From positions 310,001 through 374,000 of IMG/VR virus record IMGVR_UViG_3300043399_000877: a stretch of 64,000 bases of DNA; one strand, 5' to 3'. The notes beneath the pieces are model-generated. The model had not been told where the DNA came from and did no database searches. It was given only the letters and a program-made list of their open reading frames with translations. Within the stretch, counting starts at the first letter, position 1. Each line of letters opens with the position of its first letter. Below, piece after piece: positions 11,711 to 52,512 of this stretch. Position numbers and translations under genes: made by a program.

Positions 11711-12573
11711 ACTGCCATATCTGCTTTAATAGTTTCTTGTGGGTTGTAGTTTTCTAAACGATAGTCTTCGGGCTTTGTTTGGGTTAACTCATCTAAAGTT
11801 TTAAATTCCGGCATCACGAGTGTGGGGCCACGGTCCGGAGTTCTAGTTAGTTGCAGTTTTACGGCATCAAAATGATTCTGATAAATGTGGCAATCTCCGC
11901 CAGTCCAAACAAAATCTCCAACTTTTAAGTTTAGCATCTGCGCAAACATATGCGTGAGCAATGAATAAGATGCAATGTTAAATGGCACACCCAAGAACAT
12001 ATCTGCACTTCTCTGATACAATTGGCAACTTAGTTCATCACCTTGTACATGGAATTGGAAAAGAGTGTGACACGGTGGCAATGCCATAACCGGAACTTGA
12101 TCAGCATTCCAGGCACTTACAATGTGGCGTCTGCCATATGGATCATAATGTAGCCCTTCGAGCACCTGGGCTATTTGGTCAACGTAACCAATCTTTGCAT
12201 CCCAGCTTCTCCATTGATGACCATATACCGGTCCGAGGTCTTTAACAGTGTCTGTATTTTTGTAACCAAGATCCCGGCCCTGTCTGTCTGCATTTGCAGT
12301 CCAAATGGTAGTTTTACCCACCAATTCTTCTCTAGGCTTCCCGTAATGTATTTCTGCAAGACGGCGTTCGTCAGTGCTACCTTCTAAAAACCACAGCAAT
12401 TCACTTACAACAGACCGCCAGGCAAGCTTTTTGGTAGTAACAGCCGGAAATGTATCTCGCAAATCAAATCTCATTTGATAACCAAAAACGCCGCGTGTTC
12501 CTACACCGGTTCGGTCGTCACGATCGTTACCATGAGTTAAGATGTGTTCTAGTGCATCCATATATTGTTTCAT
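11707..12573 (-). CDS. thyA: Thymidylate synthase
   Basis: [38 protein letters not shown]. Confidence 0.97.
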
Positions 12574-13037
12574 TTTTTTCTTTTAGTCCATTTGGTAATT
12601 AGCCCAAAGTCTGTAGACTGAGTGCTTGACGGTTCAAATAATTCGGTTATTTTTTGTTTTGGTAAGAATGTATCGCATTCGTACACACCGCCCACGTTGT
12701 TTAACCATAATTCCCCTATCATGTCTAAACAACTTTCAATCAATCCGGCACCGCCTATAATAAAAATCGGCTGTTCAATTAGAGTATACATCGACCTAAA
12801 CTCGGGGAGAGTATAGCACTCTACTCCGGGAATTGGTCGATTTGTAATTACTATATTACGTCTCTTCGGCAAGGGTTTGGGCATACCGCCGTCCCAAGTA
12901 CCACGGCCCATAACCACTGCGGTTCCTAGAGTGGTCTTTTTAAACCACTCTAGATCTGCGGAATTTTTTGGCCAAGGAAGTTCACCGTTTTTTCCTATGC
13001 CCCAATATGCATCATGTGCGAGTATGGCTCTGATCAT
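12570..13037 (-). CDS. folA: Dihydrofolate reductase
   Basis: [37 protein letters not shown]. Confidence 0.93.
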
Positions 13038-49084: not shown

Positions 49085-49160
49085 TGGCGCCCCCGGCAGG
49101 AGTCGAACCCACAACCTAGGGAGTAGAAATCCCTTGCTCTTCCAGTTGAGCTACGAAGGC
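49085..49160 (-). tRNA. tRNA-Arg(TCT)
   Basis: AGGGA-TT-TCT-AC-TCCCT; CCA. Confidence 0.92.
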
Positions 49161-49393
49161 ATGTCATTTAGTAATTCATTTAGAACTGCGTCAACCAGTT
49201 CTTCTACGAACTCATCTTCTTCACTTGCGAGTACAAAATCGTCTGCACTCATAGTACCAACCACCCATGCATCCCAGTGCCGTGTGCAAAACATTGCATC
49301 AGACAAAGATTCTCTAACGCGGTCTCGGAGTCGCCGTTTTAACGGCTCCGACACAGTTGCAATCAGGGCACGTCGGTCAAGTGCAGTGGTCAC
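49151..49393 (-). CDS. Hypothetical protein
   Basis: CTRHWDAWVVGTMSADDF motif; stop lies within tRNA-Arg(TCT). Confidence 0.65.
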   Translation of the reverse strand: MTTALDRRALIATVSEPLKRRLRDRVRESLSDAMFCTRHWDAWVVGTMSADDFVLASEEDEFVEELVDAVLNELLNDMPS

Positions 49394-51273: not shown

Positions 51274-51351
51274 TGGAACTGGCTGGGGGATTTGAACCCG
51301 CCGCTACAAGATCCACAATCTTGTGTGCTAAACCGCTAACACTAAACCAGC
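51274..51351 (-). tRNA. tRNA-His(GTG)
   Basis: CAAGA-TT-GTG-GA-TCTTG; G1:U72, no G-1. Confidence 0.88.
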
Positions 51352-51563: not shown

Positions 51564-51634
51564 TGGTGCCCCCTGTAGGAATCGAACCTACCGATCCGGG
51601 CTTAGGACGCCTGAGCCGGCCCAGCGGAGAGGGC
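51564..51634 (-). tRNA. Atypical tRNA-Arg(CCT) with reduced D-arm
   Basis: 7-bp acceptor, loop GT-CCT-AA, GTAGG-TTCGATT-CCTAC, CCA; 71 nt. Confidence 0.6.
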
Positions 51635-51987: not shown

Positions 51988-52064
51988 TGGTGTGCCGGGT
52001 GAGATTTGAACCCACGACCTTGGAGTTAAGAGCTCCCTGCTCTAGACCACTGAGCTACCGGCGC
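51988..52064 (-). tRNA. tRNA-Lys(CTT)
   Basis: GGAG-CT-CTT-AA-CTCC; CCA. Confidence 0.9.
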
Positions 52065-52070
52065 ATTATT

Positions 52071-52137
52071 TGGAAGATACGCTCGCTCTCCCAGCCAGGG
52101 CACTTTCGCTCCCCAACAAAAGCACAAGCGTATCATC
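52071..52137 (-). ncRNA. CCA-ended long hairpin RNA
   Basis: GATACGCTTG/CGAGCGTATC stem, GAAA apical loop, ends TTCCA. Confidence 0.4.
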
Positions 52138-52144
52138 GAAATAA

Positions 52145-52231
52145 TGGTGAACCGGGTAGGATTTGAACCTACGTTGGCATTGCTGCTACAGATTAAAAGT
52201 CTGTCCCCATCGGCCTCTCGGGCACCGGTCC
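52145..52231 (-). tRNA. tRNA-Lys(TTT) with class II (long variable arm) body
   Basis: ACAGA-CT-TTT-AA-TCTGT; variable arm GCA-GCAA-TGC; CCA. Confidence 0.8.
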
Positions 52232-52370
52232 TAATGAATTCTGTGAAGTTTTGCTTTTCACGTTTGCGTTTCGATTTATATGGTTTATCGTGTGCGCCCG
52301 CAACTCGAAACCGTGCTGCGGCCACAAACGGATTCCTCTGTTTAGGAATCTTCTGACGTTTTCGTTTCAT
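52232..52370 (-). CDS. Small basic protein, possible alternative ribosome-rescue factor; no stop before the tRNA
   Basis: MKRKRQKIPKQRNPFVAAARFRVAGAHDKPYKSKRKREKQNFTEFI; frame continues through tRNA genes to 52026. Confidence 0.55.
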
Positions 52371-52512
52371 CTAAAAATCTTTCCTTGTATTTGCGTATAG
52401 CTGCTATCAGTGCCGCTGTGGGCGCGGGTGGTCGGTTACACGCTTCTACGATACGGTCATACTCTTCCTGAGTCAACAGTATCGTCTCGGTCTCCTGATC
52501 GGTCGTCTTCAT
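52342..52512 (-). CDS. DUF1778/TacA-antitoxin C-terminal-like peptide (56 aa)
   Basis: Hand-translated MKTTDQETETILLTQEEYDRIVEACNRPPAPTAALIAAIRKYKERF... Confidence 0.6.
   Translation of the reverse strand: MKTTDQETETILLTQEEYDRIVEACNRPPAPTAALIAAIRKYKERFLDETKTSEDS

What the first reader, a model, noticed from the sequence alone, without database searches (positions are those of the whole stretch)
52026..52370. ArfA/BrfA-like basic peptide made non-stop by tRNA processing
Seen: a 46-codon K/R-rich ORF (RNPFVAAARFRVAGAHDKPYKSKRKREK) has no stop before tRNA-Lys(TTT); the first in-frame stop lies in the anticodon loop of tRNA-Lys(CTT). RNase P cleavage at 52231 would leave a non-stop mRNA. Established: ArfA and BrfA are short basic rescue factors expressed from non-stop mRNAs, so they accumulate only when trans-translation fails. 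Inference: a phage ribosome-rescue factor using tRNA maturation to make its non-stop message.
Basis: partly seen in the sequence, partly recalled or inferred. Interest (0 to 1): 0.72.

Follow-up and report, generated by a model that had tools for sequence, protein, structure and literature searches.

The report
Stop-less basic peptide gene fused to tRNA-Lys
A jumbo phage carries a conserved 46-codon gene for a small basic protein that runs straight into a tRNA-Lys gene with no stop codon, and its relatives break the same reading frame with a tRNA, a terminator or a hairpin, as the bacterial ribosome-rescue genes arfA and brfA do, so it is probably a new rescue-type factor that is made only when the cell's main rescue system fails.

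Summary
ORF 52370..52233 (-) has 46 codons, tRNA-Lys(UUU) starts one base later, and the first in-frame stop is the UAA in the anticodon loop of tRNA-Lys(CUU).

On its own this is at chance level: 6 of 126 frame x tRNA combinations in this genome are equally open. However, the ORF is a real gene. Core dN/dS is about 0.25, and a profile search finds 730 protein clusters, all unnamed.

In phage relatives the frame meets tRNA-Lys at 12 or more different junctions, in all three phases, almost always with no stop before the tRNA. Bacterial relatives instead carry one of two elements inside the ORF: an intrinsic terminator, or a covarying 23-bp hairpin. Sequence after these elements is not conserved. 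This is the arfA/brfA design.

There is no detectable sequence relationship to ArfA, BrfA or SmpB. Some distant members have ordinary stops, and no function has been shown.

Verdict: the non-stop architecture is well supported; ribosome rescue is a reasoned inference (about 0.45). It looks like a new family, with a new way of making the non-stop message through RNase P at a tRNA. The constant pairing with tRNA-Lys remains unexplained and may point to counter-defence against anticodon nucleases.

The parts
52233..52370 (-). Conserved 46-codon ORF for a small basic protein. The family core is about residues 1-40, consensus MKxKxxxxxKPRNPxVAxAxFRKAGxHxKxxKAKR.
   Evidence: Searches give the ORF and its translation. 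Homologues. Median core dN/dS is 0.25. The AF2 model has pLDDT 83, with helices at 16-20 and 31-45. It is a single copy in the genome.
52378..52386 (-). Shine-Dalgarno-like AAGGAAAGA upstream of the ATG. Relatives have AGGAAG at the same place.
   Evidence: Read from the sequence. It is a motif match only.
52231..52232 (-). ORF/tRNA junction. The predicted RNase P cut lies between 52232 and 52231 and would leave an mRNA that ends one base after codon 46, with no stop.
   Evidence: Cleavage is inferred from the established role of RNase P and was not observed here.
52145..52231 (-). tRNA-Lys(UUU), 87 nt, with an unusual long variable arm, A73 and an encoded CCA.
   Evidence: ARAGORN. Rfam RF00005 scores 55.5 bits. 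The same variant sits at the same junction in L002-L004, L012 and L015. Other relatives have a normal 74-78-nt tRNA-Lys(UUU) there.
52026..52232 (-). Read-through part of the open frame (68 codons plus TAA). It crosses tRNA-Lys(UUU) and the spacer and ends in the anticodon loop of tRNA-Lys(CUU). It shows no conservation as protein.
   Evidence: In relatives the read-through tails vary in sequence, and total ORF length ranges from 48 to 108 aa.
51988..52064 (-). tRNA-Lys(CUU). Its U36-A37-A38 supply the first in-frame stop (52028..52026).
   Evidence: 59.7 bits.
52342..52512 (-). Upstream 56-aa ORF that overlaps the peptide ORF by 29 nt. It matches only the toxin-neutralising C-terminal half of the antitoxin TacA (PF08681). 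The pair is conserved in L009, L010 and L013.
   Evidence: 28.7 bits against a cut-off of 21, profile positions 42-80 of 80.
52130..52140 (-). Motif TTCGATGATAC a few bases after the tRNA's CCA. It is kept in relatives whatever type of tRNA-Lys they carry. Function unknown.
   Evidence: It is the only exact copy in the window. It is seen after the tRNA in L003, L004, L008, L009, L010, L012 and L014.

Best explanation
**What it is.** The 46-codon ORF encodes a member of a large, unnamed family of small basic proteins found in bacteria and phages.

**The family design.** In the branches nearest to this phage protein, the gene is built so that its mRNA has no stop codon. [quoted passage not shown]
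- an intrinsic terminator in some bacteria;
- a long, probably RNase III-type hairpin in Rhodocyclaceae and their relatives;
- a tRNA-Lys gene in jumbo phages.

**Proposed mechanism in this phage.**
1. RNase P cuts at the tRNA 5' end (52232/52231). This releases tRNA-Lys(UUU) and leaves a non-stop mRNA.
2. Ribosomes that reach this end are normally rescued by tmRNA-SmpB, and the peptide is tagged and degraded.
3. When trans-translation is saturated or absent, the untagged 46-residue peptide accumulates.
4. By analogy with ArfA, BrfA, SmpB and ArfB, its basic C-terminal helix is proposed to enter the empty mRNA channel of stalled ribosomes and promote release of the nascent chain.

**Shown here:** the anatomy, the conservation, and the family-wide elements that interrupt the ORF.

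**Inferred:** cleavage, tagging, ribosome binding and rescue.

**A possible reason for the constant pairing with tRNA-Lys.** Host anticodon nucleases that cut tRNA-Lys would flood the cell with stalled ribosomes. The phage would then supply a replacement tRNA and a rescue factor from one transcript.
For: 1. **Real gene.** There are 23 homologues at 69-89% identity and 730 clusters by profile search. R12, N13, G25, H27 and R35 are invariant across 50 diverse members. Median dN/dS is 0.25.
2. **Phage relatives.** tRNA-Lys begins inside the ORF at codon 39.0, 40.3, 41.3, 44.0, 45.3, 45.7, 46.3, 49.3, 53.7, 57.7, 59.3 or 59.7, in all three phases. The 'stop' lies anywhere from tRNA base 1 (L012, TA|G) to beyond the tRNA's 3' end. 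Only L007, L027 and L033 have a stop before the tRNA, 3 nt ahead of it.
3. **Bacterial relatives with a terminator.** A terminator-like hairpin plus T-run lies 5-22 codons before the stop. Nucleotide identity is 0.90 and 0.83 before it, against 0.43 and 0.36 after it. The neighbouring genes are chromosomal housekeeping genes.
4. **Betaproteobacterial members.** A 23-pair hairpin lies inside the ORF, and 13 of its pairs show compensatory changes. ORF lengths range from 62 to 168 aa and the tails are unrelated.
6. **Shape.** The protein is small and basic, with a confidently predicted basic C-terminal helix at residues 31-45.
7. **Phage gene content.** The phage has no tmRNA, SmpB or release-factor gene of its own, so the peptide would act with host factors.
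8. **Carriers without other backup factors.** In a 201-genome sample, 18 of 39 bacterial carriers have neither ArfA nor a third RF-1-domain (ArfB-like) gene.
Against: - **No detectable homology to known rescue factors.** The Pfam ArfA model finds nothing. hhalign against ArfA gives probability 0.09%, and against SmpB 0.08%. PDB profile searches find no ArfA or BrfA chain. There is no KGKGS motif.
- **Ordinary stops in more distant members.** An example is the Thiobacillus gene between rnfE and nth, which has an ordinary stop; other distant members end in acidic tails.
- **No significant anticorrelation with ArfB-like genes.** Fisher p = 0.27.
- **Other genes here also end inside tRNAs.** A 203-aa ORF and a 77-aa ORF of this phage both end inside a downstream tRNA, in its first ten bases, which I read as the conserved U8-A9-G10. 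Overlap between genes and tRNAs may therefore be a general habit of compaction.
- **The tRNA is always tRNA-Lys.** If only an RNase P site were needed, any tRNA would serve.
- **No expression data.** Nothing was obtained on RNA ends.
- **Complex prediction.** The run with E. coli RF2 gave no verdict.
Confidence: 0.45

Rival explanations
1. Compaction, with an unrelated function. The peptide is a real small RNA- or DNA-binding protein, for example one tied to tRNA-Lys or to counter-defence. Its gene simply overlaps the next tRNA. It is translated from unprocessed precursor transcripts and ends at whatever stop the tRNA provides. The tail is tolerated, and neither non-stop status nor tmRNA plays any role.
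For: - Two other ORFs of this phage (203 aa into tRNA-Gly; 77 aa into tRNA-Arg at window 49160) end inside the first ten bases of a downstream tRNA.
- The upstream partner is a TacA-like antitoxin fragment, and relatives carry Macro, HAD and other accessory genes in the same island. This suggests a counter-defence island.
- The only weak PDB match is a basic segment of eukaryotic topoisomerase I (E = 0.74).
- The strict link to tRNA-Lys is not explained by a need for just any RNase P site.
Against: - It does not explain why bacterial relatives with no tRNA nearby place a terminator or a covarying hairpin inside the ORF, with unconserved sequence after it.
- The junctions use all three phases, and the 'stops' fall at very different distances. 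No particular read-through product is selected.
Confidence: 0.25
2. Gated by tmRNA, but not a rescue factor. The non-stop design is real and makes the peptide accumulate only when trans-translation is overloaded. Its activity, however, is something else, such as inhibiting or remodelling translation, sensing host stress, or controlling a phage decision.
For: - The architectural evidence is the same as for the main explanation.
- There is no similarity to any known rescue factor.
- There is no significant complementarity with ArfB.
Against: - The only characterised genes with this design, arfA and brfA, are rescue factors.
- The size and the basic C-terminal helix fit proteins that bind the mRNA channel.
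Confidence: 0.15
3. Lys-codon-rich leader peptide. Translation of the ORF, which has 11 Lys codons (9 AAA, 2 AAG), senses the supply of Lys-tRNA and controls read-through or processing of the downstream tRNA-Lys, or of a terminator in bacteria, in the manner of attenuation.
For: - The ORF is rich in Lys codons and always sits ahead of tRNA-Lys in phages.
- A terminator follows the core in some bacteria.
Against: - The amino-acid sequence, not just the Lys codons, is conserved from 33% to 71% G+C, with invariant R, N, G, H and R residues and dN/dS of 0.25.
- Bacterial loci with the terminator have no tRNA-Lys or lysine-related gene downstream.
Confidence: 0.05
4. Chance ORF or assembly error.
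For: Open frames of 46 or more codons running into tRNAs occur at the chance rate in this genome (6 of 126).
Against: - The protein is conserved across hundreds of clusters.
- Selection on the core is purifying.
- Independent assemblies show an identical junction.
Confidence: 0.01

Closest known systems
BrfA of Bacillus subtilis (RF2-dependent rescue factor; PMC6881298)
   Same: - It is a small protein whose ORF contains an RNA element before the stop codon, so the natural mRNA is non-stop and the product is kept low by trans-translation.
- Several bacterial relatives of the phage peptide have exactly this feature, a Rho-independent-type terminator inside the ORF.
   Different: - No sequence similarity was found: the PDB profile searches returned no BrfA chain.
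- In the window the element is a tRNA gene, not a terminator.
- The function is untested.
ArfA of E. coli (Pfam PF03889)
   Same: [quoted passage not shown]
- By established knowledge, the non-stop arfA message is made by cleavage of a hairpin inside the ORF, and the tail encoded after the hairpin is dispensable. These two points were not checked here.
- The betaproteobacterial relatives have a covarying hairpin in the same relative position.
   Different: - There is no match to PF03889.
- hhalign probability is 0.09%.
- There is no KGKGS motif.
ArfT of Francisella tularensis (10.1101/465609)
   Same: It is a very short (40 aa) basic rescue factor that sequence searches seeded with ArfA could not find. 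This shows that such factors arise repeatedly.
   Different: - ArfT is reported not to be regulated like ArfA.
- It is restricted to Francisella.
C-terminal tails of SmpB and ArfB
   Same: By established knowledge, these are basic tails that form a helix in the empty mRNA channel. The phage peptide is predicted to have a basic helix at residues 31-45. By eye, its GAHDKPYKSKRKRE resembles GKKQHDKRSDIKERE of SmpB.
   Different: Profile comparison finds nothing. The resemblance is a short motif seen by eye and carries little weight.
tRNA punctuation of mitochondrial transcripts, and small ORFs in phage T4/T5 tRNA clusters (from my own knowledge, not checked here)
   Same: mRNA ends are defined by excision of a flanking tRNA, and ORFs lie between or overlap phage tRNA genes.
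   Different: - In mitochondria, polyadenylation completes the stop codon.
- No case is known to me in which tRNA excision is used to make a regulatory non-stop message.

Membership tests
ArfA (PF03889) | Significant match to the ArfA profile | tested here: not met
   hmmscan found no match at E<=10 for the window peptide or for 24 and 60 family members. A six-frame search of the phage found nothing at E<=10. hhalign against a 13-sequence ArfA alignment gave probability 0.09%.
ArfA (PF03889) | KGKGS-type motif in the C-terminal tail | tested here: not met
   The sequence reads HDKPYKSKRKREK. The family consensus is AGxHxKxxKAKR.
ArfA/BrfA-type regulation | The ORF is interrupted before its stop by an RNA element that sets the mRNA 3' end | tested here: met
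   By sequence anatomy only. The element is a tRNA-Lys in the window and in 18 or more distinct relatives, an internal terminator in others, or a covarying hairpin. Actual RNA ends were not observed.
ArfA/BrfA-type regulation | The product is SsrA-tagged and accumulates only without trans-translation | not testable with these tools
   This needs expression in wild-type and ssrA-deficient cells.
RF-dependent rescue factors | Binds the non-stop ribosome and recruits RF1 or RF2 to hydrolyse peptidyl-tRNA | tested here: inconclusive
   The complex prediction with E. coli RF2 gave no verdict. The host and its release factors are unknown. Biochemistry is needed.
BrfA | Sequence similarity to BrfA | tested here: not met
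   phmmer and two profile searches of all PDB chains returned no BrfA chain. A BrfA-ribosome cryo-EM structure has been published (PMC6881298), but I did not confirm that its chain is in the copy searched.
ArfT | Sequence similarity to ArfT, or the KKGGSTNKK motif | not tested
The motif named in 10.1101/465609 is not in the peptide.
Attenuator leader peptides | Only the regulatory codons are conserved, not the protein sequence | tested here: not met
   Non-Lys residues are invariant across 50 members. dN/dS is 0.25.
tRNA (RF00005), for the downstream element | Cloverleaf and covariance-model score above the gathering threshold | tested here: met
   55.5 bits against a threshold of 29. ARAGORN draws a cloverleaf with a UUU anticodon and a long variable arm.

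The most novel reading that the evidence does not exclude
This is a previously unrecognised, widespread family of alternative ribosome-rescue factors gated by tmRNA, present in Burkholderiales and other bacteria and in jumbo phages. The phage branch has replaced the internal terminator or hairpin with a tRNA-Lys gene, so that RNase P both matures the tRNA and creates the non-stop message. The result is a two-part counter-defence module against anticodon nucleases that target tRNA-Lys, such as PARIS AriB or PrrC: a replacement tRNA-Lys (here an odd variant with a long variable arm) plus a factor that clears the stalled ribosomes.
Probability: 0.3. Interest if true: 0.9.

Novelty: new variant of a known kind. 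Interest (0 to 1): 0.78.

Why it matters
**A candidate new family.** RF-dependent rescue factors (ArfA, ArfT, BrfA) were each found by genetics in a single lineage, and sequence searches cannot find new ones. The gene design itself, a conserved short basic ORF cut by a terminator, a hairpin or a tRNA, picks out a candidate new family of about 730 clusters. None of the members I checked carries a name, and the family can be tested at once in culturable Azoarcus or Thauera and in E. coli.

**A possible first viral rescue factor.** If confirmed, I know of no earlier report of a rescue-type factor carried by a virus, nor of tRNA 5' processing being used to make a regulatory non-stop mRNA. My literature searches found neither.

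**A link to phage-host conflict.** The result would tie phage tRNA islands to ribosome quality control and to the contest over tRNA-Lys.

**A practical point for annotation.** The 'proteins' annotated for this family in databases mostly carry meaningless tails translated from tRNAs or from sequence beyond a terminator.

Tried and rejected
- **Family libraries.** Pfam, PHROGs and NCBIfam gave no family for the peptide or for 60 relatives.
- **ESM Atlas.** It returned only unnamed viral clusters and a weak hint of DUF7230 that Pfam scanning did not confirm.
- **PDB sequence and profile searches.** The only hit was a non-significant topoisomerase I segment.
- **hhalign against ArfA and SmpB.** No relationship.
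- **Extending the ORF upstream under an amber-suppressor code.** Rejected: other stops close the frame.
- **Own translation factors in the phage.** Searches for RF-1-domain, SmpB and ArfA genes, and for tmRNA, found none.
- **Phyletic complementarity.** ArfA is too rare in the order sampled (3 of 201) to test. ArfB-like genes show no significant association, with odds ratio 1.6 and p = 0.27. The family is too rare in the phylum sample (13 of 401) to give power.
- **Complex prediction with E. coli RF2.** No verdict. This is not evidence either way.
- **Sequencing runs.** Only assembled contigs were available. They confirm the DNA sequence but give no RNA ends.
- **Motif after the tRNA as a repeated promoter.** Rejected: it is a single exact copy in the window.

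Full report
**Setting.**
The window is bases 310001-374000 of a 381,886-bp IMG/VR virus record, a jumbo phage with 41.9% G+C. The genome has 42 tRNA genes, one of them an amber-suppressor type (anticodon CTA), and no tmRNA was found. Fifteen tRNAs lie in the window, all on the minus strand, with small ORFs between them.

- The minus-strand ORF from 52370 has 46 codons: MKRKRQKIPKQRNPFVAAARFRVAGAHDKPYKSKRKREKQNFTEFI.
- One base follows, then tRNA-Lys(UUU) at 52231..52145.
- The frame stays open through this tRNA and the 80-nt spacer. It ends on the TAA formed by positions 36-38 of tRNA-Lys(CUU).
- The ORF cannot start further upstream.
- The DNA is confirmed by a contig with 0 differences from the probable source sample.
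- A frame this long running into a tRNA is not unusual by itself: 6 of 126 frame x tRNA combinations in this genome are as open.

**It is a real gene of a large, unnamed family.**
- A word-indexed search found 23 homologues at 69-89% identity, 49-81 aa long. They agree over the first 39 or so residues and then diverge.
- Core dN/dS has a median of 0.25.
- A profile search of 1.84 billion representative proteins found 730 clusters at E<=0.001. The match nearly always lies at the N-terminus of proteins 39-176 aa long.
- The consensus is MKxKxxxxxKPRNPxVAxAxFRKAGxHxKxxKAKR, with R12, N13, G25, H27 and R35 invariant.
- Pfam, NCBIfam and PHROGs have no model for it. Every named member is 'hypothetical protein'.
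- AlphaFold2 with the family alignment gives pLDDT 83: an extended N-terminus, a short helix at 16-20 and a basic helix at 31-45.

**The key finding is what follows the core.** I fetched about 100 loci.

*(a) Phage-like tRNA islands, 42-61% G+C.*
- The ORF is joined to a tRNA-Lys gene, UUU in most and CUU in a few.
- The tRNA starts at codon 39.0, 40.3, 41.3, 44.0, 45.3, 45.7, 46.3, 49.3, 53.7, 57.7, 59.3 or 59.7, so all three phases occur.
- The first stop is wherever the tRNA happens to supply one: its first base (L012, TA|G), bases 8-10, the D-arm, the anticodon stem or loop, or beyond the tRNA.
- Only L007, L027 and L033 have a stop before the tRNA, 3 nt ahead of it.

*(b) Relatives in bacterial chromosomal settings.*
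- The neighbouring genes include transketolase, PPK2, QueF, a LysR regulator and uridine kinase.
- These loci have no tRNA. Instead, a hairpin plus T-run lies inside the ORF, 5-22 codons before the stop.
- Nucleotide identity falls from 0.90 and 0.83 before the terminator to 0.43 and 0.36 after it.

*(c) Rhodocyclaceae, Azoarcus, Sulfuritalea, Methyloversatilis and other Burkholderiales.*
- The ORF contains a 23-pair hairpin, and 13 of its pairs show compensatory changes.
- After the hairpin the 'protein' is unconserved, and total length runs from 62 to 168 aa.

*(d) More distant bacterial members.*
- An example is a Thiobacillus gene between rnfE and nth. These members have ordinary stops, and several end in short acidic tails.

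**Interpretation.**
- An ORF whose conserved part is followed by a terminator or a processed hairpin before any stop is the signature of brfA and arfA. Their mRNAs are non-stop, so trans-translation tags and removes the product unless it is overloaded (PMC6881298).
- The phage version would reach the same result through RNase P cutting at the tRNA 5' end.
- The size, the charge and the basic C-terminal helix fit a protein that probes the empty mRNA channel, as the tails of ArfA, BrfA, SmpB and ArfB do. This last comparison rests on established knowledge, not on a test here.
It is still an analogy.

**Family membership tests.**
- Membership in ArfA fails.
- No BrfA or ArfA chain is found by profile search of the PDB.
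- SmpB shows only a short look-alike motif seen by eye.
- If the protein is a rescue factor, it belongs to a new family.

**Evidence that restrains the claim.**
- Two other ORFs of this phage end inside the first ten bases of a downstream tRNA: a 203-aa ORF into tRNA-Gly(GCC), outside the window, and a 77-aa ORF into tRNA-Arg(UCU) at window 49160. Overlap with tRNAs may be partly a habit of compaction.
- In a sample of 201 Burkholiales-order genomes (the GTDB order that holds Azoarcus), 39 carry the family and 3 carry ArfA, with no overlap, but this has no statistical power.
- Of the 39 carriers, 18 lack any third RF-1-domain (ArfB-like) gene, against 57 of 162 non-carriers (p = 0.27).
- No RNA-end data could be obtained, and a complex prediction with E. 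coli RF2 gave no verdict.

**The tie to tRNA-Lys is unexplained.**
- Any tRNA would provide an RNase P site, yet the partner is always tRNA-Lys.
- In the window and several relatives it is an odd 87-nt form with a long variable arm, an A73 discriminator and a UUU anticodon. Other relatives keep a normal tRNA-Lys(UUU), often with the same acceptor stem.
- Host tRNA-Lys is the target of the PARIS nuclease AriB, and phage T5 escapes with its own tRNA-Lys variant (PMC11464382).
- A module that supplies a replacement tRNA-Lys together with a factor that clears stalled ribosomes is attractive, but it is speculative.
- The gene just upstream, which overlaps the peptide ORF by 29 nt, matches only the toxin-binding half of the antitoxin TacA. 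This also fits a counter-defence island.

**Verdict.**
| Claim | Assessment |
|---|---|
| Observation | confirmed |
| Non-stop architecture | well supported by comparison, about 0.75 |
| Rescue function | inferred, about 0.45 overall |
| Novelty | a new family, with a new tRNA-based variant of a known regulatory logic |

Noticed in passing
window 52145-52231 (-); also L002-L004, L012, L015: This tRNA-Lys(UUU) is 87 nt long and has a long variable arm, a feature normally limited to Leu, Ser and Tyr tRNAs. It also has A73 and an encoded CCA. Some relatives carry an ordinary 74-78-nt tRNA-Lys(UUU) at the same spot, in L013 with the same acceptor stem. It could be a variant that evades nucleases, or a tRNA that is charged with a different amino acid.
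   Followed up: partly
window 52342-52512 (-): This 56-aa ORF overlaps the peptide gene by 29 nt. It matches only the C-terminal, toxin-neutralising half of the antitoxin TacA (PF08681; 28.7 bits against a cut-off of 21) and has no DNA-binding domain. It may be a phage decoy against GNAT toxins that acetylate aminoacyl-tRNA. The pair is conserved in L009, L010 and L013, but high-G+C relatives have a different upstream partner.
   Followed up: partly
window 49161-49393 (-) with tRNA-Arg(tct) at 49085-49160; genome 16003-16613 (c) with tRNA-Gly(gcc), outside the window: Two further ORFs (77 and 203 codons) have no stop before a tRNA and end within its first ten bases, which I read as the conserved U8-A9-G10 (TAG). 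Genes that borrow their stop from a tRNA seem to be a habit of this phage.
   Followed up: partly
genome 17688-17762 (c), 11837-11910 (c), 12800-12869 (c), outside the window: ARAGORN reports a tRNA with anticodon CTA (amber-suppressor type), one with a four-base anticodon (tatg), and a tRNA-Tyr(ata). These hint at TAG read-through or other recoding in part of the genome. Codon usage was not examined.
   Followed up: no
window 52130-52140 (-) and spacer 52065-52144: The motif TTCGATGATAC, just after the tRNA-Lys CCA, is conserved in relatives but occurs only once in the window. The 80-nt spacer also contains an inverted repeat (GATACGCT...AGCGTATC). This could be a processing signal or a small structured RNA. 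Rfam found nothing there.
   Followed up: partly
window 51277-51351 (-) and 51564-51634 (-): Rfam calls a tRNA at 51277-51351 (45.2 bits) that ARAGORN misses. ARAGORN calls a short 71-nt tRNA-Arg(cct), with its anticodon at position 29, that Rfam does not report at E<=0.1.
   Followed up: no
L009, about 2177-2260: A decayed tRNA-Lys(UUU)-like sequence with a mismatched acceptor stem follows the peptide ORF. ARAGORN does not call it. It looks like a hybrid of the UUU and CUU genes, and the ORF stops on its bases 8-10.
   Followed up: no
L005 3135-3200; L006, L027, L033 and L040 near codons 47-55: In L005 the stop codon sits in the loop of a long (roughly 25-bp) hairpin. The phage group with the RDxFDPD tail has an 8-bp hairpin (GGTCAGGG..CCCTGACC) inside the ORF. 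It shows no covariation, so RNA-level and protein-level constraint cannot be told apart.
   Followed up: partly
L068 and L069, after the internal hairpin: In two Rhodocyclaceae-type contigs a tRNA-like sequence, apparently tRNA-Pro, lies directly after the hairpin, and the open frame runs through it. L063 has Fic-fragment and excisionase-like neighbours. Some bacterial copies may therefore sit at the edge of integrated elements.
   Followed up: no
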